A stretch of DNA of 63,254 nt, filler included, from Pelomyxa schiedti (GCA_020536535.1; 8 parts of 8 records of this genome joined end to end with filler, not necessarily neighbours in it), one strand, 5' to 3'; shown: positions 10,001-48,900, numbered from the whole stretch's first letter. The notes: a model not told the origin generated them from the letters alone. Program-made: numbers and translations.

Positions 10001-10856
10001 AGGGTTTTTTTTGTTGTTACTACTTCTCTAAGCTAAGAAAAAAGGTTTGCAGATGATGTTTATCTAGAGAGTTATGACTCTCTGCCTGATGACTTTCGAG
10101 AAAGGTTCTTTCTTGAAATTTAACCCACTTTTTACACCCCTCAGGAACATTGGAATGTTTGGAGAGGTATATGGCTTTCTTGGGAGCTAATGATTAAACT
10201 TTGTAGGTAATAAACCTTCAAGTGTGGGAACCACGGACACAGAGGTTTGGGAACTCTAGCTATCCTCCAACTAACAGCACACAAGCTCTGCACACTGCGA
10301 ATGGTACAGAGGACTTCGATACTGCTCGATTGTAATTATAGTTTTTGATGTAACGGACAGACTTAGCTTTGACAACGTAAAGCTATGGATTCAGGTTCCG
10401 TAATTTCCTACAACCCTTCTCACTTACTTTTCTCAGGACACAGCGCACTATGCCTCGGAGGATGCAATTGTAATAACTGTTGGAGCCAAATGTGACCTTC
10501 ACGAACAGCGTGTTGTTTCCTACAAAGAGGTACCGCTTTTTATTATTATTATTATTTTTAACACCATTCCTTTCAAACACACCGGAACCGGAACTACTCT
10601 CTAATTCACGCAAAAGGCAGCACAATCGCTTGTAATGGATGATCCCGGAAACCCCATAGGAAAGCGGGAATACTTTGAAGTCAGTGCTAAAACCGGAACC
10701 AATGTTCAGCTTCTATTCCTGAGAGCAACGCAACTAGGGTGCCTACGCTGGGCTGAGAGAGAATCCAAGCCATCATCCCGATTTGTATTCAACACATCGC
10801 CATCAACCGGAGTGGGAACCACGACACCACCAAACAAGAACTGCCTAGTTATGTGA
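7065..10856 (+). CDS. Pro-rich + ankyrin repeats + F-box + degenerate Rab/Ras-like GTPase with CaaX, multi-exon
   Basis: Ankyrin-like segments: DANGQSMLHAA, DSTGITPL, DTGNSPV, LLLDAGADPN, DGKNALDWA. F-box: LKIPVELVVHILTMLPPSDLFRIQRVCK (about 9603-9690). P-loop GDPGVGKT (about 9960), G4 GAKCD, G5 EVSAKTG. C-terminus CLVM-stop at 10856. Confidence 0.75.
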
Positions 10857-11013
10857 CAATATTGTGATTCCGGAATTTCCAATCCAATGTATGTTGAGTT
10901 CTAAAACGAAAAAAACAAACGCAAAAGAAACTCAAAAGCGTTTCAAAAATTAACATGGGGGAAAATTTTCAAAATAGACAAAATGGGTCAGTGCACCACA
11001 GAGTAAGTCATAG

Positions 11014-12754: not shown

Positions 12755-14073
12755 TCTTGTGTTTGTTTGTTTGTTGTGGTTGTGGTGCTTGAGTGAGAGT
12801 TACCCCGGCTTGTTGGTGTGTTGAATTACTGCTTGGAATTTCAATTTGTTGGATTAGAGGATTTGTTGTACCAGTTGGGGAAACCGATTCGCTGGTGTGG
12901 AACTCGAAACAGGCAAGACCAAAGGGGCAGTACCAAGTTGTCGGATGTTAGTGTACCTACGCGTACCAAAGGCTGACGTGTGGACGTCGGAAACGTGACA
13001 TTCTTGATTCCGTGAACTAATATTAACCTAATGTGAGTCGTGGATGTCTGTCGTTTTTTACATTACATCTGATCCAGATCGAGGCAATGTGACTTCCGCA
13101 TCTGGCAAGTAGATGGCGGCACCCAACTTGTGCTCTGGGTTGTTGTGTTGGCTAGCCGACGAAGAGGGTGTAGAATCCCATAATGAAGCAGCACAGTGAG
13201 ACCCATGGGCTCAGCCGCTCACCGATTCTTGCCATCTTCCAGAATGTGCCGGCAAGCCTATGAAAAGGTGGGGTCAGTGAGCAGAATACAGAATAGAGAT
13301 TCTTTCTATGTGCGTGTGTGATTTGGTGGGTTTAGGTGGTTGGTTCAATCTTGGGAGTTAACATTATATGGCTGAATAAGTACTAATTTGTTTAAAGAAT
13401 ATCACAGCTATTATGGCATATAAATGTGCAAAGGGGGGAAAGGTCACGAGTTGGAAGGATGTATGCATACAATAATGTATTAGAAGAGTGCGAGAGGTTA
13501 CTTGCTTTTAAGGTACAATTTTTCTAGAGGGTGGTTTTTTATGGTTGGTTGCTGGTTTAGCAAATACAGAGAGGAACCGGTACCCGGATTTGTGAGAGTC
13601 CAACAAATATGGGGCGTGGGCGTGCACGTAAGTACAAGAGCATATCAGCAGCAATATCACGATCAACATACTCTTGAAATTAAACAGTGCGCTCTACCGC
13701 ACCCACCCCGCGTTAACGGAAATACACGCAGCCACCCACCCACAAATCAAAACATAAAACATAAATGCAGGGTAAAAAACAGCTCTCCGGTCACCCACCA
13801 TCTCCGCCTGAGCTAAGTGGCCTCGTCACCTTTTTGTTGTCTGTTTGATCTTCCCGGAAATGGTTGGCTTTTCAATCATTAAGTTAGACTGCGGTGGAAC
13901 TCCAGAATCATTTTGGTGGGCCAGATATTTAGCTCACTTCGCCACAATGGTGGTTTTTGAGTTGAACTCGCCGCGGAATCAAGCTCGGAGAGGCCCACTT
14001 CCCCTTCATGAGAGGCAACGCAAATCAGTTTGAGAACCACGGGGGTTTCGTGTTATCATTGTAACTGCATTAG

Positions 14074-27525: not shown

Positions 27526-28030
27526 AGAAGCATTATAATTACATCCAATCCCAATGGGAGCCCTTTGGAACCCACTACCACAACCACCTCCACAACCCAG
27601 CCTACGAAACACCCCTCCTCACTCGTAACCAGCCCCAATCCCTCCCCCTCACGAGGTGGTTTCCACTAAACCAAGGATTGTTCCACACAAAAACTTATTG
27701 TCATTCATCTCGTTAGACAAAATGGGTGGGTGGTAGTTGGGAGCTCTCGTGGAAACGGTCTCTATCTGAAACAGGGCAGTGAATGAACTCATAATTAAGA
27801 GTCTTTCAACGAAACGAAGTGAAACATAGCCATAGCAAAAGAACAAGCAAAGAAACACCTTGCGTTCACTCGGCGTTACCAGTGGTGCTTGTGCGTAACG
27901 TTTAGGCAGAACTTTTTTAACTTTACAAACTGGTCAGATTTCGTTTACTGGAGAGTGAGCACACTGTGATTTCGTCGTGCCATGTCTGTAACAGTGTTGG
28001 GTTCAATGACGCACATGAATTGACGGTCTT

Positions 28031-29201
28031 CTAAGAAGTGAGTTCATGGATGGCATCAGCAGCACTGAGCCTGGCCGCTTTGTCAGGGTTCATCATCCGA
28101 ATCATCACTGACTCGAGCACACTGTCACGTTGGCGTTGTAATGTTGCCACTGATTGGAGTGGTGGCGTTGGTGGTTGTGGTGATTCAGTGGCTGGTCGTG
28201 GTGATGGTGACTCTGCCAAAAACAAAGGCACTGGGAAGTGACTGAGGAGTGACTGGGTGTTGAACGTGCTCATGTCAAGGTTCATTGAGCTCCCAATGAA
28301 CCTGTTGGACTGCGGCAGAAGGGCATTCCAGAAGGTGAGTGCGAGTGCAAAGGAGTCACACTTTGAGTATGAGAACACACCACCAGTTCCCCTTGTTATC
28401 CTCTTGAGAAAAATGCTCAGCTCTGGTGGCATTGTGCCAGTGTTGCCCCATGGTTGTGACGTGGTAGATAGATGTACCTCCATGTTTGGGCAGCACTGAG
28501 ACTCACCAAAGTCGATCAGTGTCAGGTTTTCAGTCTCTGGGTCAATGAGAATGTTGTCTCCCTTGATGTCCCTGTGTTGTTTCGGTTTTTATTGTTTTGT
28601 TTTGTTTGTCACAGAAAGAGGAGTTGGGAACGAACCTGTGAACGACGAAATGTGACTCAATATGGCAGATGGCACGGAGTCCTTGAAAAAACAGATTCCG
28701 TGCACATTCCACTGTCATACAGTTTTTGGAGGATGAGTAGAACGAGAAGGTGATCCCACAATGGGGCATGAGGATGGCGATTGACTTGTAGTTGCAGAGT
28801 TGCTCTCTGAAATACATTTTGTCACTTGGTATTTTCTCCACAAACTCAGCTGAACGACTGTGGCTGAGTTGGAAAAAAGTGCTTTTATTTCCAAGAGGAG
28901 AAATACCAAGGGATGACTAAAGTACCAAGATGGCGGATCACGTTTGGGTGAGCTGGAACCAATGAGAGGATAGTACACTCAGGGTGTTCGGGCTGCAACA
29001 GTGTCTGCTGGGGTGTGTTCTCCCAGTTGAAAATGATCTTCATCACCATGTTGCTTGCTTTTGCTGTTGTGGAATCTGAAGCATAAGCACTCACACTGGC
29101 TGTGGAACTGGTTATGGGGCCACTGGATGTTGTGGATTGGAATTTCACTTTGAATACAGCAGCATTTGAGCCCGTACCAAGCAGTTCCTCCACCACAAAA
29201 T
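28031..29201 (-). CDS. Ser/Thr kinase domain (probably the C-terminal module of the giant gene, possibly a separate gene)
   Basis: Contains LGTGSNAAVFKV, MVMKII, HPNV, spliced HR|DIKGDNIL, DFG, GNTGTMPPE, CDSFALA and PDKAARLSA. Two GT-AG introns restore the frame. Confidence 0.85.
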
Positions 29202-29250
29202 CAATAATAATAAGTGTTAAGCTCAACACAGTTAACAATGTGATAATTAC

Positions 29251-32200
29251 CTCTTGACAGAAGGGATGCTCCTTCAAAGCAAGTCTGGCCATGTGTTATT
29301 TGTCCGGGGAGGGGTGAAACTACACAGCTGCATGCTTTTGGTTGTACATCTAAAAAGGGTATTCTCCTAAATGGATGCTCTCTTGAAAAGTGATAAGTCA
29401 TTGGACAGGATTGTCCCGCATAGTAGTCATTACCCTCAAACATCACTGGGGAGGAGATGGCAGCAGCCACAGTATCCAACACTTGCATAAGGGCCACCAG
29501 GTCGAGTCCAGCAAAGTAAGAGCCGCGACCTTGTGCAGCCAACCTTTTGAGCCTTTCGGTGTCACACCCAGTCCCAAAGCCAACAACAAACACCTTCAAG
29601 TCCGGGTATGCGTTGTACAGCTTTTGCATTTCGGCATCACCGTCGTCACACTGGCCGTCAGTAATGAACAGAAGCACTTTCGTCATGCCGGCAATAGGCC
29701 TATTTCTAACAGTGAATTGAAATAGAAAAAAAAAAAAAAAGAAAGCCTGATGAACCTCCGATTGGGGCCTGATCCATCCAGCACTTGCTGTAGAGCAGTA
29801 AGTGGAGCTCGAAAAGAAGTCATCCCACCAGCAAAGTGAGTGAGGCGGGAACTAAGGCCGGAAACAAGACGTTCAGGTTCTGCCTCGAGTGAACTTGGTA
29901 TTCGGTGGAAAGCACTGTCTGTGTACCCAATCACCCAGACCCTATCTTCGCAAGGGAGGCAAGCCTGTGCGCATTGTGAGATGCGACGGGTGCAGAAGGC
30001 GTCAACGGCGGTCTTCAGGGAAATCCAGGGATCTCCCTGCATTGAGCCAGACTCGTCCAAACACATTATCGTGAAGCAACTGCGGGGGGGTGGAAGAGGC
30101 AGCAAGCGGGACTGCATCAGCGCCGCCAACCTGGTCGTGAGCTCACGGTGCTTTGATTTGTCGCTGCCACTAAACTTATCCAACCGAGAACAGAACTCCA
30201 TCGTTGCGTTGTGTTGCGCCTCCGCATCCTGCTGATCCCTGAGCAGAAGCTCCATGCGCTCCCTGCAGGCCCGTTGCCGAAGAGTTGCGAGCTGCTCATA
30301 CCTGGTGCTGTCAGCCTGGAGGCGCTCAACCTCTGCCTGGGGCAAGTGATATCTTTTGGAGATGTCCTCACCCCATAGGACGATGCTGTACGAGCCCTTC
30401 TTGGCCTGTCTCGCTGTCCTGCCTTTGACCTGCACCTCCTCAGCAAGGGTTTCGGCCAGGAATGCCTGGATGACAAGAACTCCGCCGTTGTCGTTGACAA
30501 CGGGGTCGTAGCAGACAAAGTCGACACCCCTGCCAAATCCACGTGAAAAGAGGGTGACTTGCCTTGCATTTGTGGCGTTTTTGATAATCTCATCCCGACC
30601 CACAGTGTCCTCAAAGCACACGCGGCACCCCGCCACCCCACCCAGTGGGTTCGTGCTCTTGGAATTCCAGTCGATGAACCCAGACATCCTCGTTGTTGTC
30701 TCGAAGAAGATCAGCACGGCACGGTTTTTCAAAAGTGCTTTCTCGGCCATGTTCTTGATCTCAAGCATGTAGTTCTCGTAGTTGACGATTATCTTCACGT
30801 GTCTCACTGGGTCAAAGTACTGCTGTGACTCGCCAAACACAGAGGGAACATAGGACAGCAGCTTGACACCAAACTGATTGAGCAGGGTTTGGAGTTCAGC
30901 TCCAGTGAACATGAGTGTCCCAGACAAGCCAGCAATAAGGTCGAAGTGCTTGGGTGTTGGTATCTCAGCGTAGGAAAAGTGCCCACAGGGGATTGGAATG
31001 GCAACATTTTTCTCAATGGTTGGCTGGAGCAGGTTGCCTTGCTCAAACTCATGGATGTATGCAAATGAAGTCCTGTGAGGGTAGTACAGCTGGTAATTGA
31101 TGTCAGTGGCAATTCCATGCTCCTTGTAGCCAATCTTCTGCTTTTCCTTGCTGACGTGGTAAGGGGGAAGTCCGAACGTGTGCACATCTGAAAGCATCTG
31201 GTGGACCTGGTTCTCAAACAAGTTCTGGAGGTAAGGGAACTTCTGCAAAAGTGACGTGTAACATGGCTGCTGCTTCACTGTGGGCAGTGAAAAGCTCGCG
31301 TCAGTGTGGTGTTTCCACACGTACTGAATGAGTTGCAGGCACTCTGGGAGCTGCAACAGAGCTACTGGCTGATATGTCTTTCCCAAAAAGTCTTCACTGA
31401 AAAACACATCCACCTCATCAATCAACAGGGCCCTCTTCAAAGAGCGTTCAGCTGGAATTGGTTGGCACAGCTCGGGTTGGTTCAAGAACTGGCTGATTCG
31501 GTCACGCAGGGGCCTGGACTTGTTGATGAACCTCTCGCACAGCTGCCTGATTGTCCCATAAAATATTCTGTCCTTCACCCGAAGGGTGACAAACAGGGGG
31601 CTGAAGGCTGCACCATCCCTTTCACTAAGTGTCTCAGAGTATGAAATCACATCCACTTGGAAACCCTTCAGCGCAAGCACAATGGCAGTAATCCCAAGGG
31701 TGATTGATTTGCCTTCCCCTGTTCTGAGCTTGAGGAACTGGTTCAGGCTGGGATCTGTAACGAGCTGCAGAACCGCCACAACTTGTGCCGGGTGTGGCTG
31801 CTTCAGGTTGGTTTTGTCACTTACTGCCGTCCTTTGTGTGCTATCCATTATGGCAAGGTCCATAAGTGTCCACAGACCAAACAGTTCTGCAATTAGCTGT
31901 GGGATTGGCTTCGATGCCGATCTGGAGGAGATACGTTCACCTTCTTCCTTGATATCACAGAAGAACTTGTTCTCAATAAACGCAGTGTAAGCCGCTTTAA
32001 ACACCTCGTAGTCAGCCTTTAGTTTAGCCTTTGCATCCCCCTCCAAATAACTGAGCAATCCTTTCGAAGCCGATTTCTGCTGCATAAAGTGTGAGAGCAC
32101 ATAGTCAATGTCATGTGTGGACCACAGCTTGCTGAGTGCCTTGTTTCGGGCCATTTGGAATTCCTGGTTTTCGTTGATGATTCCCCATCCCACTCCTCCT

Positions 32201-35200
32201 TCATGTGACATGAGACAGGTGCCAAGCTCCAAGCCGACCCTGATGTTTCCACTCAATCCTTTGAAGAAAAGCTTCACTTTTTCCGTCACAACCTGCTGAA
32301 TGCCTTTTCCCAGTGCTGGCAGGTCTTGTGCCAGTTTGTAAATGTAACAGAGCATGTTTGCAACTTCGTCTGGATCCAACGAAGGTGGCAGTTGGATGGC
32401 CCTTACTCCCTCCAGCACTGTTTCCATGAATTGTTGGGGAGCCCCGATATTCAAGGTGCCACAGAGAGACTTGCCGTTTATGAAGAGCACAAGAAGTTCA
32501 TTTATTGCTGCATAATTCTTTGGATTGGTGGACCACAGGTTCTGAGCAGTCGTGGACTTTCCATCGAAAAACTTGGTCACCTTTTGCTTTATCGCAAACT
32601 CGACGGTGGTTTCAGGTACCTCCTTGAACATTTGATGCACTTGTGCTTCGGCTTTCCAAATCACTTCAACTTCTGCAAAGGTGGCAGGGGTATGGGCTTC
32701 CAGTTTCGGATCACATTCAGCAGACATCTTGGTGAGTTGTTCCTTGACTTTCTCACAAAATTGCTGAAACGTGGGGAAAGTGGGGTGATTCAACAGGAGC
32801 AGGGCTGCCAGTGGCTGCAGACACTTGTGACCCAACTCCAACCTTTTTATGTCACGCAGAACGGTAGTAACCTCCATGAAACTGCTGCAACTTAGAGACC
32901 AATTGAAAGTATTGAGAAGTTTCTCAGCCTGGTTCTTTATTGCTTCCATCAGGGCGGTACACTCTCTAACCATGTTGGAAGCTTTCTCTCGAAGGGGACC
33001 CACTGCAAATATCCCCTCCTGTCTGGTGCAATACGGCAATATGAAGAGCACCAGTCCCAATCCAGTGAGCTGTGATTGTTGGGCCTGAATTGGCAAGCAA
33101 ACCGTGGTGAATTCGGAGGTGACAATAGGTTCCGTTTCCTTTTGGATCTTTTTTATGATGTCAAGGGAATTACTCATGAACTCTTGGCAGAGCTTTGTGA
33201 ACTCAGAGGAAGGGAGGTCTTTTATCAGACTGGAGGCCTTCCAGAGGAACTCAAACAAACTTGGGGAAAGGCTTGCTCTGTCCACACACAGTTTGTTGAA
33301 GGATCCAGTCAGATCAAGAATCAGCTGATCATAGACACTTTTGTCCCATTCCTTTTTGAGCTTCAGGAGCTCTCTTTGCACCCCTTCAGCGTCTCCCTCA
33401 TTGAACAGAGAAAGCACAACTCGCTCCCGATTTTCATTGTTCTTTCTCATGCGGTCTTTAGCTTTGTCAAGCACAACACTAACGGACCGCAAAAGCTCTG
33501 GCTTCAGTGTTTGCAGTGAGGCCACCAGGTCCTCCAGTTCAAGCTCTGCTCCTGGGTGCCCTTCAATGGAGCTGCACTTCGTTTTTATAACGTCTGCCAC
33601 CCTTTGTTGCACCTGTGCACCTCCTGCAGTGCCAAACAACAGGTTGATTTTCGCGCAGTCGAAGGTCTCTTGTGTTGCTTCTTTGATCTTTTCGTCCAGC
33701 AACTTTGTTTCATCCAGAAAATCGCTTTGAAGGGTACGCAGAGCAGTAATCACTGGCGGTTGCAAAATGTTCACCACGGTCAGTGAGAGTTGGACCTGTT
33801 TCAAAACTTTCACATGTTCAATCACATCGGCTACCCGCCCTGGAGGAATGAAAAAAATCGGGAGCAGAAATGTGAGTCGAGAGACCCATGGAAATGGAAA
33901 AATAAAAACCTTGTTTGCTGAGTTGTCTCACTTGTTCAATAGTTGTACTAATGACTTCATTCACAATTGTCTGGAAATTGACAAAATCGCTTTTGAACTT
34001 ATCGACAATGACAGCTGCCTCCCTTGGGCTCTCAGGGGTTCCTTGCAGGGAGTTACACATCATCTGAAGTGACTTGAATAAATCAGCGATTGATGCTGCA
34101 TTGACGACAGCATTCTGCTCGAGTGGTAGCCACCAGGTCACTGCTTGCTTCAGCTCTTCCATTTTCATTGACACCCATGCTTGCACTTGGCTAATGTTCT
34201 TCTTTTGTGTCGGACCCGCTTTCAGGAAACCCTCCACAAGGTCGAACTGTTTGCTGTCCAGGGCACTGGCGAGGCTCTTGTTACTTTCATTGAGTTTCCC
34301 CTCCAATCCAGTGTGGCACTTCTCAATCAGCTGGCGAACTTCGGGGATGTAAATGCTCAATACACTGTGTTCAGCTGCCTTCTTAAGCAGTACTTGTGCC
34401 TCTGTCGCTGGTGTGTCCAAGCTGGTAATTCTGCTCGCAATGGTTTCGAACATGGTGTGGAGAGGGATCAACACCTGGTCTAACGTACAGATACTCTGTG
34501 AAATGGCCCACATGCACGTTTTCAAGATTTCGATCTTTTCTGACACTGGAGTGTCCAACAGCCCCAGATTTTGAAGCATCACTCCCATCTTATCTACCAA
34601 CTGCATCGAAAGTGCCTCCTTGCACTCCTTGGTGAGCGTCCTGGCAATCATAACTTCGTCGCTTGAGGCACACAACTTTTCAATCTCTGCCATGTCAAGA
34701 AAACCTTGCCTCGTTTTCCTGAAGTCCAAGTCCCCTTGAGACAACAAATTGCACAGTTCTTTTGTCCGAGTTATAACATCAACAGAGCACCTTTCTTCAA
34801 TTTCATGAAAGTTAGGTATTACAGAACCAAGCACCCTCATGGCAGCCAGCTGTTTAAAGTAAACACTCACCTGTGCAAAGAGCCTCACACTCCAGGCATC
34901 CTGGATCCTTTTTTCTGTTCGTTCAGCAAGGGCTTTCAGGTGAGCATAAGTGTTATCGAGGAGTGCTTCTGTGCACTTGCTGCAATACTCATCCACCCAC
35001 GATGTCCTTTTTATCTGCACTATCATGTCGCTTACACGTGGAAAGTCAACAGGGAACTTCGTCAGTAGATCCTGCAGAATGTTTTGGGTGTCCCGAAGAC
35101 ACCTGGACAGGTCAGCCATGGTTACTGCGAACTTCTCCTGAACTCCACGTGCGACGCCTTCATCAAGGTCTTTCAGCTTCTTGACTTGGGCCACTTTCCA

Positions 35201-37126
35201 GGCAAGTTCTTTGCCTTGTATCTCCTCACTGTTGCCAGTCAGCTGCCCAACCTGCTCGAGGAAGGAAAGACAGTAATCCTTGATGAAAAGGACAGCCTTC
35301 CTGTGCTGTGCAGGGACGTCCAGGTCGAGCTTGGAGAGCAAAGAGCAGAGGTTGTGGTTGTAGGCAACCATCTTTATGGTGAGGAAGTGGAGGGAAAAGG
35401 CTGTGAGGTCAGATGGGACAGTCTGGACTGCTTCAAAGGACTTTGCGAGGATGCCCTTGAGCTGGGTGAGGGTGCGGACCCTGAGCTCAGCCACGGCGTT
35501 CACGTGCGGAAGTGAGAACAGCTTTTCCTCTGCCTCTGAGAGGAGGAGGAGGTTCCTGGAGACTTCGAGCAGGGGCACCCCTCCAGCCGCCGCATGGGTG
35601 CTTGGAGACTCCAGCACCGTGGCCGCCTCCTGGCTCAGGAGCTCCTCGACGCTCGGGGTAATGCAGGCGGCGTTTACGATCTTCTGGATGACCCGCTGGG
35701 AGACAGACTCGAACAGCTGGTAGATCTCTTTGTTTGCCAGTGACTTGCCAAGATTCTGCACGAGAAGCATCTTCTCTGCAAGCTGAGACAGCTCCCTCTT
35801 TGCCAGGCACGGATCGACCACCTCCTCAATTGATGCCGTACAGTACCCACCCACCACCGCCATGGTCCACTTGTCGAACTCAGCAACCCTCTCTATCCCA
35901 GTGAAGTGCTCGACCGTCGATACCTCGAGCAGCACGAGGGTGTCCCGGTACGAGAGTATAAACATGCAACCTTCCTCATCCACGCATTGTGATTTCAGCA
36001 TCTGCTCGAGGATATACCGCGAGTCCTTCTGCATCTTGGTCACCTTCGCCATCAGCATCGAGCGGCAGCTTGCCTTCATCTTGCCTGTGTATTCCCCTGT
36101 GTACTTGTCCAGCTCCTGCAGCAGGCTCAGCAGCCTGTTTGCCACCTTCAGCCCCCTCCCAGGCTCTTGCTCAACCCACCCCTGGAATGTCTGCTCCAGC
36201 ACCCCCTGCATCTCCTGCAGCTGCAGCTGCACCTCATCAGTCAGAACTATGTTGAATACTGCAGATGGGTTCCTGATAGCCGAGGCCCTCGTGAGCACGC
36301 GCACGAAATCGTCTCGTGAGGAAAGTGATGGGTCGAGGGGATCCAGAAGGAGGACCCTGTTTGCTTCTTCGCCGCTTTGCTGTGCCTCCAGGTCGTTGAG
36401 AATGAAGTCAAAGAGATCTTTTGCTTTTTCAGCAATCCCAGGATCCTTGTGCTCACACATGCATGCCTCTATCACGTAGTGGCAATGCCCAATGATGTCC
36501 TGGAGTGTGTGGTGTTGAACGTTGGTGATGAACACCAAGATGTTGTTGAGCCAGTTCGGCGACTTGAAGAGCCTCATAACGAGGCGAATGAGGTCCCCAA
36601 CACCCTTTCCACGGTCTGCAAGAAGGGAGTAGTAGTGGATGAGGAGAACGGGAATGACTGCTCTGCATGTTCTGAGGCAGTCGTGGAGGCCGACTATGTT
36701 GGCGAGGTCAATGAGGGAACCTGCAGTGCCATCAAACCCAGAGTCGACAACCACGAGCGAGGTGTTTGGTATCGCAATCGATGACGTGTTCCTCGTCTGT
36801 GATCGCTTCCCGTGACCGACCGTCAGCCTCTCGTCCTGTTCAACGACGTCGAGCACGGTAGTGGAAGTGGTTCTGCCGTTTACTGTGGTGACATGTTCCT
36901 TCTGAATGATCTTGTGTCCAGCAAGAAAGTGTGCAGTGAGTGTCTTCCCTTCGTGGTGTGTGAACAAAACCGTTTGTGTTGTTCACTATTTGAGTGTTTG
37001 GAGAGCAGTGGTACCTGCGCCGCTTGGACCAATAAGAAGAACAATTTTTTTGTTGGTCAAGTCTGCGCCACCGTTTTGCTTGCACAGCTCAAGCAACTCA
37101 GAAAATTGAGCAATAACGTCCGACAT
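29251..37126 (-). CDS. Giant protein: AIG1/septin-like P-loop GTPase + long helical region + SecA-like SF2 ATPase + VWA
   Basis: Exons 37126-37015, 36948-33910, 33839-29756 and 29699-29251, with in-frame GT-AG introns of 66, 70 and 56 nt. Splicing creates the P-loop IGPSGAGKT. VVVDSGF is G3-like and FITN is G4-like. SecA motifs: PHPAQ, TGEGKS, LSERD, YGT, IDEVD, GLSGT, GRGVDF, QVKGRTARQ. VWA MIDAS: DESGS...T...ITDG. Confidence 0.88.
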
Positions 37127-40627: not shown

Positions 40628-43600
40628 TCAGAACCAGTGGACAGGGGACAGGAATGAAAGAATGTGGTGTACGGTGCTATGTGATAGCCTTCCAATAGCT
40701 ATTGGTGAGTTGCAGTCTCCATCGAGAGCAACTCTCTTAAGGTGCTCAGGATCTGTGGGAGTTGTGGCTGCCAATGACAAGCTAGTGCAGCGTAGCCAAC
40801 AGAGGAGTACAGTCCTGAGGATGTGGCACTTGAACCACCACGGGAACAGCTCGTGTTTGAATGGGTCCCACGTTGCTGCATGGTTTACGAATCGCCACAA
40901 ACTCCGGCTATGTGCATCAACAAGTTCCCCTTTGATATCCACGTTTCCATCCCTCCTCAGTTTGTATTCAGGAATGCGCACGCCATGGCACCACAGCAAA
41001 TCCGCGATGTCACGGAAGCCATGCTCGATTGCAGAAAGAAGGAGGGTAGATGGAACGCGCCCTGGTTCACACAATGGGAGAAGCTTGCAAACAGTATGAT
41101 AAGCACCACGGCTCACTGCCCAGAACAAGAAGGTGGTTTTGAACCGTCCTGGCCACATCGCCATGAGTTTACATATTTTCTTTTCTACAAACTCTCCAGT
41201 AATCGGGTGAATGGGCTGCAACCAACTCAAGACTGCCTCATAGCACTTTGTCACCACTGGACACGTCAGAACCTCTTGTATTTTCTCCTCAACAACCACA
41301 TTGGCTTGCTGAGTGCCACGAAGCAAACGGGGCAACTTCCTTGGCTCAAGCGGGGCAATGGGCTGGATTTCACTGATCAACAGTGCTTTCAGCAGTGGTC
41401 CCCACATCCCCGGTGTTGATGTGCAGTTTTTAAGTACATCCTCCATGCATGCCCTTCTGTCAGGGGAACGACTCCAAAGAGACACTACTGAACCTTCGTT
41501 GTCCTCAATCATAGACTGTGATGACTGACAGCACAACTTCATCACAGAGGACAGACACGTGAAAGCACCAGAACTCAGGGTCCGGGTGTTCTCCCCTGGG
41601 TGCTCTGATGCCAGCAGCACTGTGAAGCTGGTAGCGAACCAGGCTGTTATATCCACTGAAAGGGAGGTGACTTTCACCCCAAAGCGTGAGCAGTGCCGGT
41701 ACACAGAATGAAGGCGGGAGGACCAAATCTCCAGCACGAAGAGGTATCGATTTTTGTCTTCCAGGATTCGCCGTACAGTTTTTAAAGGTGTCCGATGTTC
41801 TCGTTTGTACTGGGCTATGTATTGTGTCGCAGCAAATGAAAAAAGAGGAAGGCTTTTGATCTGATCAGCACAGAATTTCATCATGTGATACAGCAACCCT
41901 TCTCCTCTCCTGGTGTGTGTTTTTATTGCCTTCTCCAGCAGAAGTTCCAGTGAACTTGAACTCACCTGCCCAAACAGTTGCTTGACACTGAGCAGAATAT
42001 CAAGGTGAGGTGGTGAATCATCAGCAGTGGCAAGTGTAATAGCATTCATTGCGAGGTTCTCATTAACGGATCCTCCTGTGATAACCACTGGGATGATCAA
42101 CAATGCTGAAACAGCCTTGAGAAGCATCTTGTCACTTCCGATGTGATTCTCAACGAACTGGACAATGGCCTTGTGCCCATTTGCTGGATCAACAGAGCAC
42201 AGCTTCGTCACCCTGGAAATAACTTTCCTTGTGATCCAAGGGACCTTCTTAAAGAAAGCTTCCTGCAATCCAAAGCTTTCACAAAACTGGAGAAACCCTG
42301 CAATGATACGGGCTGTGATATTGTAATGCTTGAGGAACTCAATAACATCATTTGAAGCTTGAAGAGGCAATACATCCCATCCATTCACCCACCGAAATGG
42401 AAGCTTTGAACCCACTGATCGACCTTCAGCAAGACTCGACACAAAGGTATCACAGAGCTCATTAGCGAGCTCTGGCAACAGTGGCCCCAGGTTCACACAA
42501 CATAAGAGCAGTTCTTTACCATAATGGTGTGGTATCCTATTTAGCAGAACTCGCAATTGGTTTGCAAACGGAACGAAAAAGTGCCTGCAGTTTGGAACCC
42601 ACATCAACCTCTTCAGAGCCTTTATTGCCGCACCAAACACAGGCCAGTCCAAATCACCAGCACTCTTGCAATATTCCCTGGAGGCAATCTCAAACAATCT
42701 GCCAAAGAATGGCCCCACGCCAACAGGAACCAAGTCGTTGAGCACACCAAACTCGGAGATGAACATCTCTGCAATGTGGGCGACACAAGTGCCAACGACC
42801 AAGTCGTAGTGGTGCCGATCTTCCCTGCTCATGCTTGCAGTCACACCCACTCCCACAATCTCTGGCTTCTGGTGCCAGACCGCGAATATTTCCTCAGCAC
42901 TGTGGCCAATCGCCCTCATGAACTTCCAGAAGTTTTTGACCATGCCGTAGATATCATCATCTTCTGTTGGCTCCTCAGCATCAGCATGAGGAGCATCGAG
43001 AATGGACAGAACCTTTGGTTCCACCTGGGCCTGAAGTTTTGGGAGGCACTCAGAAATATCGTCAATGCGCCTCTGCAACCCAGAAATCACAGCACTGAAA
43101 TTCTTGCGGGATTCCTCCCATCTGGCGGTGTTTGCAGCCTCCAGTTCCGTCTTGACTTCTCTTTTTCCGTTTCCGTTTCTATACGTTGCCTTTGCGTCTG
43201 CGTCTGTTGCCGCCGCCGCCGCCGCCGCCGTCTCGGTTTGTGGCATGTGTGGTCTCCTCGTCGCACAGCCCAGTAGCACCTTTAGCAGCACCAGCTGGCC
43301 TGTGAGCTTCAGGAACTTTTCTCCCGAAGCCGTCACCGTTGCCGGCTCCTTGTCGGGGTGCGCCATCATGTCGGCGAGCTTGGACTTGTGCAGGGCCAGG
43401 TCGCGGCGCATGGACTCGCGCGTCCGCCTCAACTTGCGCACCCTCTTGACCTGCAGCCACACGGGGTCGTCGTGGTGGTGGTAGGCGTTGTGGATGTTGT
43501 CGCGGCCGTAATCGCCTTCTTCCTCTTCCTCTTCCTCTTCCTCTTCGGCGGCTGCTGCTTCTGTTTCTGCTTCGTACCTGTGCTCAAGGTAAAACTCGCA

Positions 43601-43663
43601 GTCATCCAGGTCACTGTCACCGCTCTCGCGCCCTCCGTCATCGATCTGGTTGGTGGCCATCAC
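40628..43663 (-). CDS. Intronless 1011-aa protein: acidic/coiled-coil N-terminus, helical repeats, ankyrin-like pair, C-terminal F-box-like tail
   Basis: Long ORF. LFWAVSRGAYHTVCKLL and LLSAIEHGFRDIADLL are ankyrin-like. The tail reads WDPFKHELFP...TVLLCWLR...GRLSHSTVHHILSFL. Confidence 0.8.
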   Translation of the reverse strand: MMATNQIDDGGRESGDSDLDDCEFYLEHRYEAETEAAAAEEEEEEEEEEGDYGRDNIHNAYHHHDDPVWLQVKRVRKLRRTRESMRRDLALHKSKLADMMAHPDKEPATVTASGEKFLKLTGQLVLLKVLLGCATRRPHMPQTETAAAAAAATDADAKATYRNGNGKREVKTELEAANTARWEESRKNFSAVISGLQRRIDDISECLPKLQAQVEPKVLSILDAPHADAEEPTEDDDIYGMVKNFWKFMRAIGHSAEEIFAVWHQKPEIVGVGVTASMSREDRHHYDLVVGTCVAHIAEMFISEFGVLNDLVPVGVGPFFGRLFEIASREYCKSAGDLDWPVFGAAIKALKRLMWVPNCRHFFVPFANQLRVLLNRIPHHYGKELLLCCVNLGPLLPELANELCDTFVSSLAEGRSVGSKLPFRWVNGWDVLPLQASNDVIEFLKHYNITARIIAGFLQFCESFGLQEAFFKKVPWITRKVISRVTKLCSVDPANGHKAIVQFVENHIGSDKMLLKAVSALLIIPVVITGGSVNENLAMNAITLATADDSPPHLDILLSVKQLFGQVSSSSLELLLEKAIKTHTRRGEGLLYHMMKFCADQIKSLPLFSFAATQYIAQYKREHRTPLKTVRRILEDKNRYLFVLEIWSSRLHSVYRHCSRFGVKVTSLSVDITAWFATSFTVLLASEHPGENTRTLSSGAFTCLSSVMKLCCQSSQSMIEDNEGSVVSLWSRSPDRRACMEDVLKNCTSTPGMWGPLLKALLISEIQPIAPLEPRKLPRLLRGTQQANVVVEEKIQEVLTCPVVTKCYEAVLSWLQPIHPITGEFVEKKICKLMAMWPGRFKTTFLFWAVSRGAYHTVCKLLPLCEPGRVPSTLLLSAIEHGFRDIADLLWCHGVRIPEYKLRRDGNVDIKGELVDAHSRSLWRFVNHAATWDPFKHELFPWWFKCHILRTVLLCWLRCTSLSLAATTPTDPEHLKRVALDGDCNSPIAIGRLSHSTVHHILSFLSPVHWF

Positions 43664-45760: not shown

Positions 45761-45918
45761 CTCAAAACAAGATTCGACCATCTACCCACAAACTGAATTG
45801 ACTCCCCATTCCTGGTGGGACTGATTGAAACCAACTTGATTCGTTCTTTTTACTAAACCACTTTTACTAAAACACTTAAAAACAGAAACAGAAAAAAAAG
45901 ATCCAGTTTGTTTCTGGA

Positions 45919-48900
45919 ATGTCCAGAAGAAAGGCCAGTGACAGCGAATCTCCGGACGAAGGAGAGCCGGAACAACTGCAACCAAAGACAACAACGACGA
46001 CGACGACCACCACAACTACAAGCACAAGTAACGCAACGAGTTTGCAGGGGGGGGGAGCCCACCGCGCATGGAACCGATGTCGACTTGTGCTTCAGCGGGG
46101 GTGGCATACGGTCCGCCGTATTCTGTTCTGGTGTGCTCAACGGCATTTGCTCGCGCAAAGCCAGACCAAACAACATAAGGTTCCCTTTGTCGCTCCTCTC
46201 GTGTTCTATTCACCTTATTATTATTGGCAGTTGTGTGTCAGGTGGAGGCTTCACTGGGAGTCTATTCCAGCAGTACTACGACCCAGGTTTGACCCCCGAT
46301 GTTATAGCTGGTCAAGTGTCTGATCGGCTGAGAGAAAAGTATGCCTATCTGGTCAGGGCCAATGGTACAGGGTGCAAAGCATGTGGCAAGGGTTGCTTAA
46401 GTGTCATGGAATGGACTGGATGGTAGTAGATATTCTCTTTTCTTTCTTTCTCATTTTCTTCCCTTCTAGGATCCTACTTGGGTTGGTGTTCCAACTGAGT
46501 TTTCCAATCATGCAAATTGTGCTGTTTTCACCACTCACTAGATGGCTTATTATGTAGTGTTTTCTCTTCTCTCCTAGTAGTCTATTTTGCTTTCATTCAT
46601 CTCCTACAGTAAAAGCAACTCAGCAGGCACAGTTATTCGTAATTGGCTTTGGTTAATGATACTGGGCCTCATTCTTTGTCTTTGTATCATTCAATTGCTC
46701 CTGTATGCTATCTTCCCAACAGAACAAGAAGAATCAAACCAGACAACAACCCTCCCAGCAAAACAAGAAGAGCCAAAAGATGCAGACTCCCTGCTCGACG
46801 CTTCTTTCACAGACAGACAACCCTCCATTCAAAAGGGGGGCTACCACTCAATGCAAGGACAGGCAACAAAGACAACTGGCAGTCTGAAACGTTGCTGTAC
46901 TGTTGGTGTTATTGCATTCTATTTCATTCATGCCATTGGAGCTCTACATGTAATACTTGTCGTGCTCTTTACTGTTGACGCACTCAACGACTTTGATAGT
47001 GCGCAATGTTTCATTTCTTTTAGCATTGAGGTTCACTCGATTAGATAATTCCAATTCCACTTCCCTTGCACCAGCTAATGAGTCCAGTTACACTTCCCCT
47101 GCACCACCTAATGAGTCCAGTTCCTCTTATGTACCAACTCCATCTTTTCAACAATCTCAACTCCGCTTTAGGAAACAACCAATGAACCAAGGCACATTTC
47201 CCGAGTATGAGTTTACCACAAATCTCAATACTCAAGCTGAATCTTAAGGAATTTTTTGAATTGCTTACCGCCTTTGGGACTATAATTGCCTGGATTTTCT
47301 TGAAATCAAGACCTACCCTTGAAAGAAAGGTTTGCACAACACCTCTGTGCTGTTTCTCAAGCATACTGGCAGATGCAGAACATCTTGACATCAAGTCCCA
47401 TCCTTGGAAGCAAGGTTCACACAACCCTCTGTGTTGTTTCTCAAGCATACTGGTAGATGCATTACATGACCCCAGGTTTTATTTATACAGCTCCCTGGAT
47501 TGGATGGTTTCTGGCCCACTTATGTTTCTGGAGAATGGGTTATTTTGGGGCCTGTAATAGTAGGACATATTGGGGTTGTGTATTGGTTGCGTCTGCCATC
47601 CTAAGTGTTTTCTGGCTCTATTTTTGGGTGAAGAACAATCTGCTTTACTGGTAATGGAAAGAATTTTTCATTTTACACTGCTGTTAGGGCATGGCACCGT
47701 CATTTGAAACTGGCTTTTAATGTCACAAATTCCGCAGCAGGCGTACCGCTTAACCTTCCGTCAAGTGCCGCAAACAATTGGCAAGGGCCTACTTTCATTT
47801 CAGTACTCACAAGTAATGGTGTGGTGGAAAAGCTGGATGATAGTGAGCCCTATTCCATGTAAATTTCTTTTTTCCCTTTCACTTCATTTGATTTGTGGAA
47901 GGGTATGGTCAAACCAGGATGGCGTGCTGCAGGACAAGTGGGGTGGAAACCTGGGATTTGAACCGATTTCCCAAGATGCTTTGGTGGCCATCTCGAGCTC
48001 AGGTTCTTCACCTTGAAGCATCTCATTTTTGCTTTCCTTACCAATTTAGCTCTTGCATACTCCATTGGGAAGTACAATACCGGTTTTGGCCGAATCGTTT
48101 TGGTCTACTACAGAATGAATTCCATTTTTATGTTTCTTACTCCTGCTGAAACAGGAAGTCTCTGGTGTTGGACTGGGGACATGGGTTAGAAATTCAAAAA
48201 TAAGCTCTTGCCAACTGTGGTGCTGCCGGATTTTTATTGGCCTATTTTATGGGTTTGTTGGAGGCATGGCAATGTGGGGTTCTGCGAACAAGTTGTGGTA
48301 TGGTGGGGACGAGAAGAGCCCAGATACCTCAGAAAATCTGGATGTGAATGAAGTACTGGTTATCTTAGCCTCTGTGCTGTTCTGTGTGTACTCTGCACTG
48401 GCATTTGTACCTGGTATTCGTAAGTTCCTTCTTGTTGATCCCTACCACAAGTATGTTTTTTTTTTCCCTCTGGCATTTTTCAGCGCCAGTCAATAAACCT
48501 TGAACCAGGTTCTTGTGGTCGACTTACAACATCCATTTTGTGACCAGAGACCTGAGGGAGTTACCTTACCTCTATCTAACTGATGGGGGACATACCAACA
48601 ACTTTGGGCTGCTTCCGTTGCTTTCCTCATCCTTGTACACAGTCCGCAACAACCCCGCACATGCAAACTTTCGACCCATCATAGTAGTTGATGGAACAAG
48701 TGTACCCACTGCTGACGAATATATAGGTGCCCTGAAGGAGTGCACCAAGGCCCTTAAGTAAGAACAAACAACAAACCATCTTCCGTTTCACTGTTTGTTC
48801 CCCAGGTGCGAATTCTGGCCGCTCACGAATCGTGATGTTAACAAGGAGTTTACACAATTTCTGGCTGGGGAGTTTGATGTGATTCACAGACACGGTACTT

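What the first reader, a model, noticed from the sequence alone, without database searches (positions are those of the whole stretch)
28031..37126. Giant eukaryotic GTPase - SecA-like ATPase - VWA (- kinase) protein: candidate defence/surveillance machine
Seen: four exons splice in frame into about 2,560 aa (about 2,900 with the kinase). The N-terminal P-loop GPSGAGKT exists only after splicing, so ORF callers miss it. After roughly 1,500 aa of helical sequence come intact SecA-type motifs (TGEGKS, DEVD, GRGVDF, Q..GRTARQ) and a MIDAS-bearing VWA domain. Known: SecA is the bacterial/plastid SecY-coupled polypeptide motor. AIG1/GIMAP/GBP-type GTPases and giant multi-NTPase proteins such as RNF213 and GVIN act in cell-autonomous immunity. 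Inference: this is a SecY-independent SecA-like motor with a VWA substrate grip, a GTPase switch and a kinase output. It could thread or unfold targets, or attack intracellular bacteria or viruses in a phagotroph. SecA-like proteins occur in some eukaryotes, but I know of no characterised protein with this architecture.
Basis: partly seen in the sequence, partly recalled or inferred. Interest (0 to 1): 0.88.

Follow-up and report, generated by a model that had tools for sequence, protein, structure and literature searches.

The report
Giant GTPase / SecA-like ATPase / VWA / kinase gene
This is a real seven-exon amoeba gene for a 2,913-residue protein that joins a GIMAP-like GTPase, a long helical scaffold, a SecA-like ATPase, a metal-site VWA domain and a kinase; its GTPase-to-ATPase core belongs to a large family that nobody has characterised, found in many eukaryotes and in bacteria that live inside them.

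Summary
On the minus strand, 37126..28031, seven exons read without a stop into 2,913 aa. RNA contigs confirm the three kinase-region introns. Homology supports the other three, including the one that splits the P-loop.

Domains found:
- A GIMAP-like G domain (VIA Z 10.9).
- About 1,370 aa of probably helical scaffold.
- A SecA-like ATPase with all its motifs intact (Pfam SecA_DEAD; model pLDDT 88; SecA Z 24.5 against about 15 for other helicases).
- A VWA domain with a complete MIDAS site.
- A kinase with complete catalytic motifs.

It is not a translocase. No preprotein-binding, wing or zinc-tail domain is detectable.

The architecture is not unique. The ATPase module has 651 strong cluster representatives, mostly 2,000-3,500 aa proteins from amoebae, ciliates, diatoms, dinoflagellates, rotifers and Hydra. 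Bacterial relatives come almost only from intracellular lineages (Legionellales, Chlamydiae, Wolbachia). GTPase plus SecA-like ATPase is the conserved core. The VWA domain is common but optional, and the kinase is seen only in Pelomyxa.

Two Pelomyxa schiedti paralogs (about 80% identical) have cleanly lost the whole ATPase module. A defence role is plausible but untested.

The parts
28031..37126 (-). Whole coding span: 7 exons, 8,742 coding nt, 2,913 aa plus TAG stop
   Evidence: Translating each exon in its phase gives no internal stop. The ATG at 37126 and the stop at 28033-28031 were read directly.
37015..37126 (-). Exon 1: aa 1-37 plus 1 nt. Holds the lead helix, strand beta-1 and the first half of the P-loop (GPSGA-G)
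   Evidence: Read. The same exon, with an annotated start codon, is present in paralog locus L001.
36949..37014 (-). Intron 1: 66 nt, GT..AG, splits the Gly codon of GPSGAG|KT
   Evidence: The intron position is conserved in L001. Not covered by the reads that were laid.
33910..36948 (-). Exon 2: the rest of the G domain (to about 36257), then helical scaffold
   Evidence: Open frame. Model pLDDT 84.7. Best structural match GIMAP4, Z 10.9, rmsd 2.9 over 146 residues. Homologous to the N-termini of family members.
33840..33909 (-). Intron 2: 70 nt, GT..AG, in frame
   Evidence: In the paralog locus L001 the tblastn matches to the exon 2 and exon 3 reading frames lie next to each other on one strand (9077-11737, then 11720-12802). 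No RNA contig covers this intron.
29756..33839 (-). Exon 3: helical scaffold, SecA-like module and the first half of the VWA domain
   Evidence: Open frame of 1,360 codons. Pfam SecA_DEAD and VWA_2.
30085..32349 (-). SecA-like module (aa 1548-2302). This is exactly the segment missing from both Pelomyxa paralogs
   Evidence: Paralog alignments skip residues 493-1247 of this exon's open reading frame (29683..33825), leaving only 15 nt between the flanks. AF2 pLDDT 87.7, pTM 0.88. Foldseek top 36 hits are all SecA or SecA2, E down to 2.6e-17. VIA Z 24.5.
31705..31722 (-). Walker A, TGEGKS (aa 1757-1762)
   Evidence: Its T, G, G, K and S positions are invariant and the E nearly so across 30 family modules.
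31408..31419 (-). Walker B, DEVD (aa 1858-1861)
30406..30534 (-). Motifs V (GRGVDF) and VI (QVKGRTARQ) of the second nucleotide-binding domain
   Evidence: The family profile aligns positions 463-674 to SecA residues 357-554.
29700..29755 (-). Intron 3: 56 nt, GT..AG, lies inside the VWA domain
   Evidence: The splice gives PNR|RPIAGM, matching PNRRPIADM in the paralogs. The VWA profile halves 1-91 and 102-161 lie on either side of it. The poly-T tract stopped reads from being laid here.
29495..30084 (-). VWA domain with MIDAS residues DESGS (30057-30043), GGMTS (29829-29815) and ITDG (29665-29654)
   Evidence: Pfam VWA_2 at 32.7 bits on the exon 3 tail and VWA at 21.8 bits on exon 4. Motifs located.
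29251..29699 (-). Exon 4: second half of the VWA domain plus a linker
   Evidence: An RNA contig covers 29251-29569.
29202..29250 (-). Intron 4: 49 nt, GT..TG (non-canonical 3' end). Joins the VWA exon to the kinase Gly-loop exon
   Evidence: A 435-nt RNA contig (run X2) skips exactly this stretch, with 116 nt on its shorter side and no mismatch. The frame is restored only by this splice.
28907..29201 (-). Exon 5: kinase Gly-rich loop GTGSNA (29178-29161), a low-complexity insert, and the VAIK-type Lys in MVMK (29049-29038)
   Evidence: Conserved in frame in both paralog loci.
28858..28906 (-). Intron 5: 49 nt, GT..AG
   Evidence: RNA contig joint.
28636..28857 (-). Exon 6: middle of the kinase, ending in HFVVH-R
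   Evidence: Matches paralog P0002.
28572..28635 (-). Intron 6: 64 nt, GT..AG, splits the Arg codon of HRD
   Evidence: RNA contig joint, reported with the cut placed +1.
28031..28571 (-). Exon 7: kinase C-lobe with (HR)DIKGDN, DFG (28513-28505) and PPE (28429-28421), then a Pro-rich insert, tail and stop
   Evidence: Pfam Pkinase E 2.1e-6 over profile positions 123-259. Paralog P0002 scores 56.4 bits against a cut-off of 31.7. RNA contigs cover 28001-28383.

Best explanation
Shown. This is one eukaryotic gene, most likely from Pelomyxa schiedti. It encodes a 2,913-aa protein with no detected signal or membrane-domain match. The domain order is: GIMAP-like P-loop G domain, about 1,370 aa of scaffold, a SecA-like SF2 ATPase, a MIDAS-bearing VWA domain, and a protein kinase. 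It belongs to a large uncharacterised family whose conserved core is the G domain plus the SecA-like ATPase. The VWA domain is a frequent C-terminal addition. The kinase is seen only in the Pelomyxa copies. The ATPase is not a Sec translocase. It keeps both nucleotide-binding domains, an insert of about 155 aa where SecA carries its preprotein-binding domain, and the long scaffold helix. It lacks the wing domain, the two-helix finger and the zinc tail that couple SecA to SecY and SecB.

Inferred. The protein is an NTP-gated mechanoenzyme that works on other proteins in the cytosol or on a membrane surface. The MIDAS site would grip an acidic residue of a ligand. The SecA-like clamp would use ATP to pull on, strip or unfold it, as other ATPase-plus-MIDAS machines do (midasin, MoxR-VWA, Mg-chelatase). 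The G domain would control assembly or recruitment. The kinase would report or self-regulate.

The family's patchy, multi-copy, domain-shuffled distribution, and its repeated presence in obligate intracellular bacteria, make host-microbe conflict or symbiont handling the most likely setting.
For: Gene:
- The exon phases close with no stop.
- RNA contigs span introns 4-6 and link the VWA exon to the kinase exon.
- The VWA profile halves lie on either side of intron 3.
- The P-loop intron is conserved in a paralog.
- Homologues carry the same order in single uninterrupted ORFs or transcripts: Endostelium 2,449 aa, Pyxidicula 2,507 aa, and bacterial ORFs of 2,000-3,500 aa.

Domains:
- Pfam SecA_DEAD and VWA_2 score above their cut-offs.
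- The family profile finds SecA at E 3e-18 in both nucleotide-binding domains, against 1e-5 for DEAD-box Mss116.
- The ATPase model has pLDDT 87.7. SecA scores Z 24.5, against about 15 for eIF4A, DinG and RIG-I.
- The G-domain model's best match is GIMAP4 at Z 10.9, followed by GIMAP7, EngB and Toc33.

Not a translocase:
- 0 of 30 modules match SecA_PP_bind, SecA_SW or SEC-C.
- The nearest ESM Atlas cluster is 87% eukaryotic and also lacks SecA_PP_bind.

Family:
- 651 cluster representatives at E <= 1e-30.
- Taxa named.
- Bacterial loci come almost only from Legionellales, Chlamydiae, Wolbachia, Coxiellaceae, Holosporaceae, Cardinium and Margulisbacteria.
- 105 of 142 long members have the same G domain upstream, and 27 of 142 have a VWA domain downstream.
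- Fusion partners include U-box, RING and DnaJ.
- Eukaryotic and bacterial modules interleave in the tree, and the window's module is sister to Mastigella with 100% support.
Against: - No experiment or expression pattern bears on function.
- The substrate is unknown. SF2 cores more often act on nucleic acids than on proteins.
- Two Pelomyxa paralogs under purifying selection (dN/dS 0.2-0.5) work without the ATPase module. So in this lineage the scaffold, VWA and kinase have a function that does not need the motor.
- The G3 motif of this copy is one residue short and its G4 motif is degenerate. GTP-dependent switching is therefore doubtful here.
- The VWA domain is absent from most family members sampled, so a MIDAS grip cannot be the family's general mechanism.
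- RNA contigs do not cover the ATPase module or introns 1-3.
- Presence in intracellular bacteria is equally expected for mimics of host trafficking or signalling proteins.
Confidence: 0.5

Rival explanations
1. The molecular machine is the same, but its role is housekeeping. It would be a remodeller of a large cytosolic assembly, membrane or cytoskeletal structure, and intracellular bacteria would copy it simply because they mimic host cell-biology proteins.
For: - The family spans several eukaryotic supergroups.
- The window's module groups with the other archamoeba, Mastigella, as vertical descent predicts.
- dN/dS against the paralogs is below 1 throughout.
- GIMAP, septin, Toc and dynamin-type G domains often act on membranes (matches).
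Against: - The distribution is patchy.
- Copies are multiple and sometimes lie close together on one contig: four or more in Reticulomyxa, and two on one Acytostelium contig.
- Partners are swapped freely: U-box, RING, DnaJ, VWA, kinase.
- Paralogs have lost the motor wholesale.
- These features are unusual for core housekeeping machines.
Confidence: 0.25
2. The SecA-like core acts on nucleic acid rather than protein. The protein would then be a giant helicase-type sensor or remodeller, in the manner of RIG-I, ZNFX1 or DinG-type ATPases.
For: - 20 of 30 modules also match Helicase_C and 10 of 30 match DEAD.
- DEAD-box, DinG and RIG-I structures align at Z 14-15.
- Some databases name members 'helicase'.
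Against: - SecA stands well clear of all helicases, at Z 24.5 against about 15, and E 3e-18 against 1e-5.
- The module keeps SecA-specific features: an insert after Walker B and a long scaffold helix.
- No nucleic-acid-binding accessory domain was detected.
Confidence: 0.15
3. It is a true Sec-type translocase motor feeding a SecY/Sec61 channel, for example at an organelle or a symbiont membrane.
For: SecA is the nearest solved fold and the nearest sequence family.
Against: - About 15% identity to SecA.
- No SecA_PP_bind, SecA_SW or SEC-C in any of 30 modules.
- After the scaffold helix there is only one more short helix before the VWA domain begins, so there is no room for a two-helix finger.
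- The module sits inside a 2,913-aa multi-domain protein.
- The paralogs do without it.
Confidence: 0.03
4. It is an artefact: separate neighbouring genes joined by over-reading, or bacterial contamination in a single-cell assembly.
For: - The deposited annotation splits the paralog on L001 into two gene models.
- The source genome comes from single-cell data, and its host is known to carry bacterial symbionts (paper PMC10579272, listed).
Against: - Six short spliceosomal-type introns, three of them seen in RNA.
- Domains are split by introns (P-loop, VWA, HRD), so each exon needs its neighbour.
- The same order occurs in single ORFs elsewhere.
- The nearest relative is another archamoeba.
Confidence: 0.03

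Closest known systems
SecA / SecA2 preprotein translocase ATPase (for example PDB 2ibm, 6itc, 4uaq, 6t4h)
   Same: Both DEAD-like nucleotide-binding domains are present with Walker A, Walker B (DEVD) and motifs III, V and VI. There is an insert of about 155 aa between Walker B and motif III, where SecA carries its preprotein cross-linking domain. A long helix follows the second nucleotide-binding domain. It is the best structural match (Z 24.5; 439-569 residues aligned) and the best sequence match (E 3e-18).
   Different: About 15% identity. No detectable SecA_PP_bind, wing domain, two-helix finger or SEC-C tail. The module is embedded near the C-terminal third of a giant eukaryotic protein. 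No evidence of a SecY partner. Two close paralogs have deleted it.
Uncharacterised eukaryotic 'SecA family profile / SecA DEAD-like domain-containing' proteins (for example Adineta steineri A0A814CE15, Reticulomyxa filosa X6M4Z7, Heterostelium album 'helicase', a Mastigella eilhardi transcript) and their giant homologues in Legionellales, Chlamydiae and Wolbachia
   Same: This is the family the gene belongs to. The ATPase module is 30-42% identical. The N-terminal G domain is homologous in 105 of 142 long members, and a VWA domain follows in some. Zhang et al. [quoted passage not shown]
   Different: None of these has been characterised. The kinase tail was seen only in the Pelomyxa copies. 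The window copy has a damaged G3 motif.
GIMAP / AIG1 (and Toc, septin-type) GTPases
   Same: G-domain fold, with best match GIMAP4 (Z 10.9) then GIMAP7 (Z 9.4). The family motifs GxTGxGKT, S.T, DxPGFxDT and FTHxD resemble this clade.
   Different: No Pfam AIG1 match for the window copy. Its G3 reads DS-GF and its G4 reads ITNVQH. The Z score is only about 1.5 above generic TRAFAC GTPases. Here the domain is the head of a 2,913-aa protein.
ATPase-plus-MIDAS remodellers: midasin/Rea1, VWA8, MoxR-VWA, Mg-chelatase ChlI/ChlD
   Same: The logic is shared: an NTP-driven motor, a long linker, and a MIDAS VWA domain that grips a protein ligand.
   Different: Those motors are AAA+ rings, whereas this one is an SF2 SecA-like two-lobe ATPase. 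There is no homology outside the VWA domain. This is an analogy recalled from general knowledge and was not tested here.
Giant multi-NTPase immune proteins (RNF213, GVIN/VLIG)
   Same: Size, several NTPase modules and a long helical body.
   Different: No homology was detected. The comparison is by analogy only.

Membership tests
SecA translocase | First nucleotide-binding domain of DEAD-like type, with Walker A and Walker B (Pfam SecA_DEAD) | tested here: met
   SecA_DEAD scores 32.4-33.4 bits against a cut-off of 24.6, but only profile positions 71-148 of 290 are matched. 30 of 30 family modules match. TGEGKS and DEVD were read directly.
SecA translocase | Second nucleotide-binding domain (P-loop_SecA) with motifs V and VI | tested here: met
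   The family profile aligns positions 463-674 to SecA residues 357-554 at E 3e-18. 29 of 30 modules match P-loop_SecA; the window copy itself does not at E 0.1. GRGVDF and GRTARQ are present. Structure match Z 24.5.
SecA translocase | Preprotein cross-linking domain (Pfam SecA_PP_bind) | tested here: inconclusive
   0 of 30 modules match PF01043. An insert of about 155 aa with mixed helix and strand sits at the same topological position. Some SecA chains align over 550-569 residues, more than the two nucleotide-binding domains alone. The insert was not folded or searched on its own.
SecA translocase | Helical wing domain (SecA_SW) and the two-helix finger that enters SecY | tested here: not met
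   0 of 30 match PF07516. After the 43-residue scaffold helix there is one 16-residue helix, then the VWA domain begins.
SecA translocase | SEC-C zinc tail, and functional coupling to SecY and SecB | tested here: not met
   No SEC-C match. Coupling to a channel cannot be tested with these tools.
GIMAP/AIG1-type TRAFAC GTPase | G-domain fold closest to GIMAP | tested here: met
   VIA search of about 48,000 chains: GIMAP4 Z 10.9 (146 aligned, rmsd 2.9), GIMAP7 9.4, EngB 9.2, Toc33 8.6. Foldseek alone was weak, with GIMAP7 at E 0.028. The model lacks exon 1.
GIMAP/AIG1-type TRAFAC GTPase | G1 P-loop, GxxxxGK[ST] | tested here: met
   GPSGAGKT is formed across intron 1. The family consensus is GxTGxGKT.
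GIMAP/AIG1-type TRAFAC GTPase | G3 motif, DxxG | tested here: not met
   The window reads VVVDSGFDG, with D and G only two residues apart. The paralog reads VVDSPGFDD and the family DxPGFxDT.
GIMAP/AIG1-type TRAFAC GTPase | G4 guanine-specificity motif ([NT]KxD or TxxD) | tested here: not met
   Both the window and its paralog read FITNVQ. Other members have ITKLD or FTHxD. Nucleotide preference is therefore unknown.
VWA / MIDAS domain | VWA fold with the DxSxS...T...D metal site | tested here: met
   VWA_2 at 32.7 bits (cut-off 27) on the exon 3 tail, and VWA profile 102-161 on exon 4. DESGS, GGMTS and ITDG were read directly.
Eukaryotic protein kinase | Gly-rich loop, VAIK Lys, HRDxKxxN, DFG and APE-like motifs | tested here: met
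   GTGSNAAV, MVMK, HR|DIKGDN, DFG and PPE were read directly. Exon 7 alone gives Pkinase E 2.1e-6 at 27.8 bits, below the 31.7 cut-off because only the C-lobe lies on that exon. Paralog P0002 scores 56.4 bits.
Uncharacterised giant GTPase / SecA-like family | The family-type G domain upstream of a SecA-like module in one polypeptide | tested here: met
   The window's G domain aligns to the N-termini of family members at E 1e-9 to 1e-15. 105 of 142 long members and 12 of 19 bacterial ORFs show the same pairing.

The most novel reading that the evidence does not exclude
The family would be a SecA-derived polypeptide-gripping motor that works without any membrane channel. It would be a cytosolic extractor or unfoldase, coupled to a GIMAP-like GTPase, used by many eukaryotes against or for the management of intracellular microbes, and repeatedly captured by those microbes as effectors or decoys. 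Pelomyxa, which lives with bacterial and archaeal endosymbionts, would have wired it to a kinase output and spun off motor-less paralogs as regulators.
Probability: 0.2. Interest if true: 0.85.

Novelty: new variant of a known kind. Interest (0 to 1): 0.62.

Why it matters
SecA is textbook as the bacterial and plastid motor that pushes proteins through SecY. This gene points to a large, unstudied sister lineage of that motor. It lacks the channel-coupling parts, is welded to a GIMAP-like GTPase, and often carries a MIDAS domain. It is spread across eukaryotic supergroups and, among bacteria, is found almost only in obligate intracellular ones.

That pattern is typical of genes at the host-microbe interface. 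It gives concrete, testable candidates in tractable organisms: dictyostelids, Tetrahymena, rotifers, Hydra, and Legionella or Chlamydia relatives.

For genome annotation it shows three things:
- The deposited Pelomyxa gene models split or truncate these genes.
- They miss the kinase Gly-loop exon, which lies behind a GT..TG intron.
- ORF-based callers cannot see the P-loop.

Tried and rejected
- The full spliced protein was never assembled, searched or folded. All domain work was done exon by exon or on single open frames. As a result the G-domain model lacks exon 1 (beta-1 and half of the P-loop).
- The search for homologous proteins with the two large exons found only the two Pelomyxa paralogs. 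This is because of its length window and says nothing about longer kin.
- Pfam on the G domain of the window copy gave nothing. Profile-to-PDB hits for the G-domain alignment were dominated by bare P-loop matches such as midasin and ABC proteins, and were not used for classification.
- Foldseek on the G-domain model gave no hit at E <= 0.001. The wider VIA search was needed.
- The ESM Atlas feature search on the helical region returned no usable hit.
- Viral contigs gave only three weak matches (E 1e-8 to 1e-5), so there is no sign of a giant-virus branch.
- Literature searches found no paper on this architecture. There are only passing mentions of SecA-like domains in Amoebophilus effectors and in actinobacterial toxins.
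- A canonical GT-AG solution for intron 4 was sought by hand and rejected. No GT..AG pair restores the frame, and the RNA contig shows GT..TG.
- The careful tree search did not finish, so the quick IQ-TREE result was used. It is unrooted, because no canonical SecA sequence was on hand as an outgroup.
- dN/dS gave no evidence of positive selection. Values were 0.2-0.5, and about 1 only in the low-complexity Gly-loop exon.


Full report
**Where and what.** The piece is eukaryotic DNA of about 47% G+C. The finding lies on the minus strand. Two very long open frames (33818..36967 and 29683..33825) plus smaller ones downstream carry the gene. Reading the junctions by eye, and then translating each exon in its own phase, gives seven exons:

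| Exon | Coordinates |
|---|---|
| 1 | 37126-37015 |
| 2 | 36948-33910 |
| 3 | 33839-29756 |
| 4 | 29699-29251 |
| 5 | 29201-28907 |
| 6 | 28857-28636 |
| 7 | 28571-28031 |

Together they hold 8,742 nt, which is 2,913 codons plus a stop, with no internal stop. Everything below was done exon by exon or on single open frames.

**Support for the splicing.**
- *Intron 1* (66 nt, GT-AG) splits the Gly codon of GPSGAG|KT. The paralog locus L001 has an intron at the same codon, with conserved exons and a diverged intron. Its deposited annotation starts at the same ATG.
- *Intron 2* (70 nt) is in frame.
- *Intron 3* (56 nt) lies inside the VWA domain. The splice gives PNR|RPIAGM, against PNRRPIADM in the paralogs. 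Pfam VWA profile positions 1-91 fall on the exon 3 tail and 102-161 on exon 4.
- *Introns 4, 5 and 6* are seen directly as joints in contigs of three single-cell RNA-seq runs: 29250-29202 (49 nt), 28906-28858 (49 nt) and 28635-28572 (64 nt).
- The contig across intron 4 is 435 nt long and has no mismatch. It joins the VWA exon to the kinase Gly-loop exon, so those two domains are on one RNA.
- Intron 4 is GT..TG, not GT..AG. No canonical pair restores the frame.
- The RNA contigs are short and 3'-biased. They do not cover the ATPase module or introns 1-3.

**Source organism.** The only close database proteins are two Pelomyxa schiedti proteins, Pelo_17473 and Pelo_9700, at 77-87% identity. The DNA run holding 78% of the stretch's sampled words, which may be the window's own source, belongs to the same study as the RNA runs. 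The window is therefore most likely another P. schiedti contig.

**The ATPase.**
- Pfam SecA_DEAD is above its cut-off.
- I cut out the 755-aa segment 30085-32349 and searched it against 1.84 billion cluster representatives. It gave 2,625 hits, 651 of them at E <= 1e-30. Most are 2,000-3,500 aa proteins with the module in the C-terminal third.
- An alignment of 30 modules (A1) has invariant or near-invariant TGEGKS, DEVDVFF, GVTGTL, FGRGxDF and QxKGRTARQG.
- The A1 profile finds SecA chains at E 3e-18 in both nucleotide-binding domains. DEAD-box Mss116 scores only 1e-5.
- The AlphaFold model is confident (pLDDT 87.7, pTM 0.88).
- Foldseek's first 36 hits are all SecA or SecA2.
- VIA-align gives SecA Z 22-24.5, against about 15 for eIF4A, DinG and RIG-I.
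- So 'SecA-like' is right. It is nonetheless not a translocase SecA. Identity to SecA is about 15%. None of the 30 modules matches SecA_PP_bind, SecA_SW or SEC-C. After the 43-residue scaffold helix there is one short helix before the VWA domain starts.
- The nearest ESM Atlas cluster is 87% eukaryotic and carries SecA_DEAD plus P-loop_SecA without SecA_PP_bind.
- An insert of about 155 aa sits where SecA has its preprotein-binding domain. Whether it has that fold is open.

**The other domains.**
- *G domain.* The exon 2 part aligns with the N-termini of many family members. Its model (pLDDT 84.7) matches GIMAP4 best (Z 10.9), then GIMAP7, EngB and Toc33. The family motifs are GxTGxGKT, S.T, DxPGFxDT and FTHxD. 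This copy reads DS-GF, one residue short, where the paralog has DSPGF. Both read ITNVQ at the G4 position. The fold is GIMAP-like, but GTP switching in this copy is doubtful.
- *VWA.* All MIDAS residues are present.
- *Kinase.* It has a Gly-rich loop, the VAIK-type Lys, HRDIKGDN, DFG and PPE. Exon 7 alone gives Pkinase E 2e-6. The paralog scores above the cut-off.
- *Scaffold.* The region of about 1,370 aa between the G domain and the ATPase is helical in the parts that were modelled. Elsewhere its composition fits helix: about 50% helix formers and 6-8% Pro plus Gly.

**The family.**
- Named members come from Amoebozoa (Mastigella, Pyxidicula, Endostelium, Heterostelium, Acytostelium), ciliates (Tetrahymena), diatoms, dinoflagellates, Paulinella, Reticulomyxa, a euglenid, bdelloid rotifers and Hydra.
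- Among one genome per bacterial and archaeal species, relatives come almost only from intracellular or host-associated lineages. These are Legionellales, Coxiellaceae, Aquirickettsiella, Chlamydiae, Wolbachia, Holosporaceae, Cardinium, Bandiella and Margulisbacteria.
- The bacterial relatives are single ORFs, mostly of 1,500-3,500 aa. Some carry a U-box.
- In my sample of 258 members, 105 of the 142 long ones carry the same G domain upstream. Only 27 of those 142 carry a VWA domain downstream. 12 of 19 bacterial ORFs have the G domain and none has a detected VWA domain.
- Other partners are U-box, RING and DnaJ. The kinase appears only in the Pelomyxa copies.
- A quick maximum-likelihood tree puts the window's module with Mastigella at 100% support. 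Bacterial and eukaryotic modules interleave, needing at least 2-4 changes of label. The tree is unrooted, so the direction of transfer cannot be read from it.

**The paralogs.**
- Both P. schiedti relatives align at about 80% to the scaffold and to the VWA and kinase parts. Both jump over exactly aa 1548-2302, the whole ATPase module.
- tblastn on their loci shows only 15 nt between the flanks, so the module is truly absent there rather than hidden in an intron.
- The module is ancestral to the family. Both paralogs share the same five-residue junction. A single clean deletion after duplication is therefore the simplest reading.
- Pelo_17473 has also swapped its front end for a different VWA-plus-GTPase head.
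- dN/dS against the window copy is 0.2-0.5 with dS about 0.3. All three copies are therefore maintained.
- The deposited models of the paralogs skip the Gly-loop exon, which is conserved in frame in both loci. The probable reason is the non-canonical intron.

**How it probably works.** What is shown is the anatomy. It has an intact SF2 SecA-type ATP site, an intact MIDAS site and intact kinase motifs. It has a GIMAP-like head. It lacks the parts that dock SecA on SecY. The rest is inference:
- The protein is a nucleotide-gated mechanoenzyme acting on proteins.
- The MIDAS domain holds a ligand.
- The SecA-like clamp pulls or unfolds that ligand.
- The G domain governs assembly or recruitment.
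- The kinase signals.

I rate a protein substrate above a nucleic-acid one because SecA stands so far above the helicases in every comparison, but this was not tested.

The family's patchy, multi-copy, partner-swapping pattern, and its repeated occurrence in obligate intracellular bacteria, fit a host-microbe conflict or symbiont-handling role. They would also fit mimicry of a host housekeeping machine.

Three facts limit the model:
- The motor-less paralogs are maintained.
- The VWA domain is optional across the family.
- The G3 motif is damaged in this copy.

**Verdict.** The gene is a new, kinase-bearing variant within a large uncharacterised family. The literature mentions that family only in passing: Zhang et al. 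2012, PMC3482391, list SecA-like and GIMAP-type domains among Amoebophilus effector domains.

Noticed in passing
window 29202-29250 (minus strand): A 49-nt intron with GT..TG ends instead of GT..AG. It is spanned by a 435-nt RNA contig with no mismatch. The same structure is conserved in both paralog loci, where the deposited gene models skip the kinase Gly-loop exon.
   Followed up: partly
L001 12802-12818 and L002 4491-4507, against window 30085-32349: Two P. schiedti paralogs lack the entire 755-aa SecA-like module. The same five-residue junction (RDVST / HDIST) stands in its place, and they remain under purifying selection.
   Followed up: yes
L001 8924-14920: The deposited annotation splits this paralog into two genes (328 aa and 1,512 aa), although tblastn shows continuous homology to the window gene's reading frames from 9077 to 13207. 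It is probably one gene with the G domain at its head.
   Followed up: partly
window 36740-36760 (G3 motif): This copy reads VVVDSGFDG where the paralog reads VVDSPGFDD. One codon (Pro) is missing from the otherwise near-invariant DxPGF motif.
   Followed up: partly
P0001 (Pelo_17473), residues 1-720: This paralog has a different N-terminal part: a VWA domain, a second type of P-loop GTPase (GFMGSGKSS), and two similar repeats of about 90 aa. This part is fused to the shared scaffold at about residue 723.
   Followed up: no
window 40628-43663 (minus strand): A 1,011-aa open frame with an acidic, Glu-rich N-terminus and sub-threshold ankyrin hints near its C-terminus (E 0.03-0.04). No Pfam family at E 0.01. 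It is unrelated to the finding's gene.
   Followed up: partly
window 45908-46426 (plus strand): An open frame with a GGGxR-type motif and a sub-threshold patatin-like phospholipase match (E 0.016, 15.8 bits against a cut-off of 27.7). It may be one exon of a patatin-like gene.
   Followed up: partly
L015 3114-12263 and protein P0013: A bacterial metagenome-assembled genome (Pseudomonadota) and a near-identical metagenomic protein carry U-box, GTPase, scaffold and SecA-like ATPase in one ORF of about 3,050 aa. This looks like an effector built from eukaryote-type parts.
   Followed up: partly
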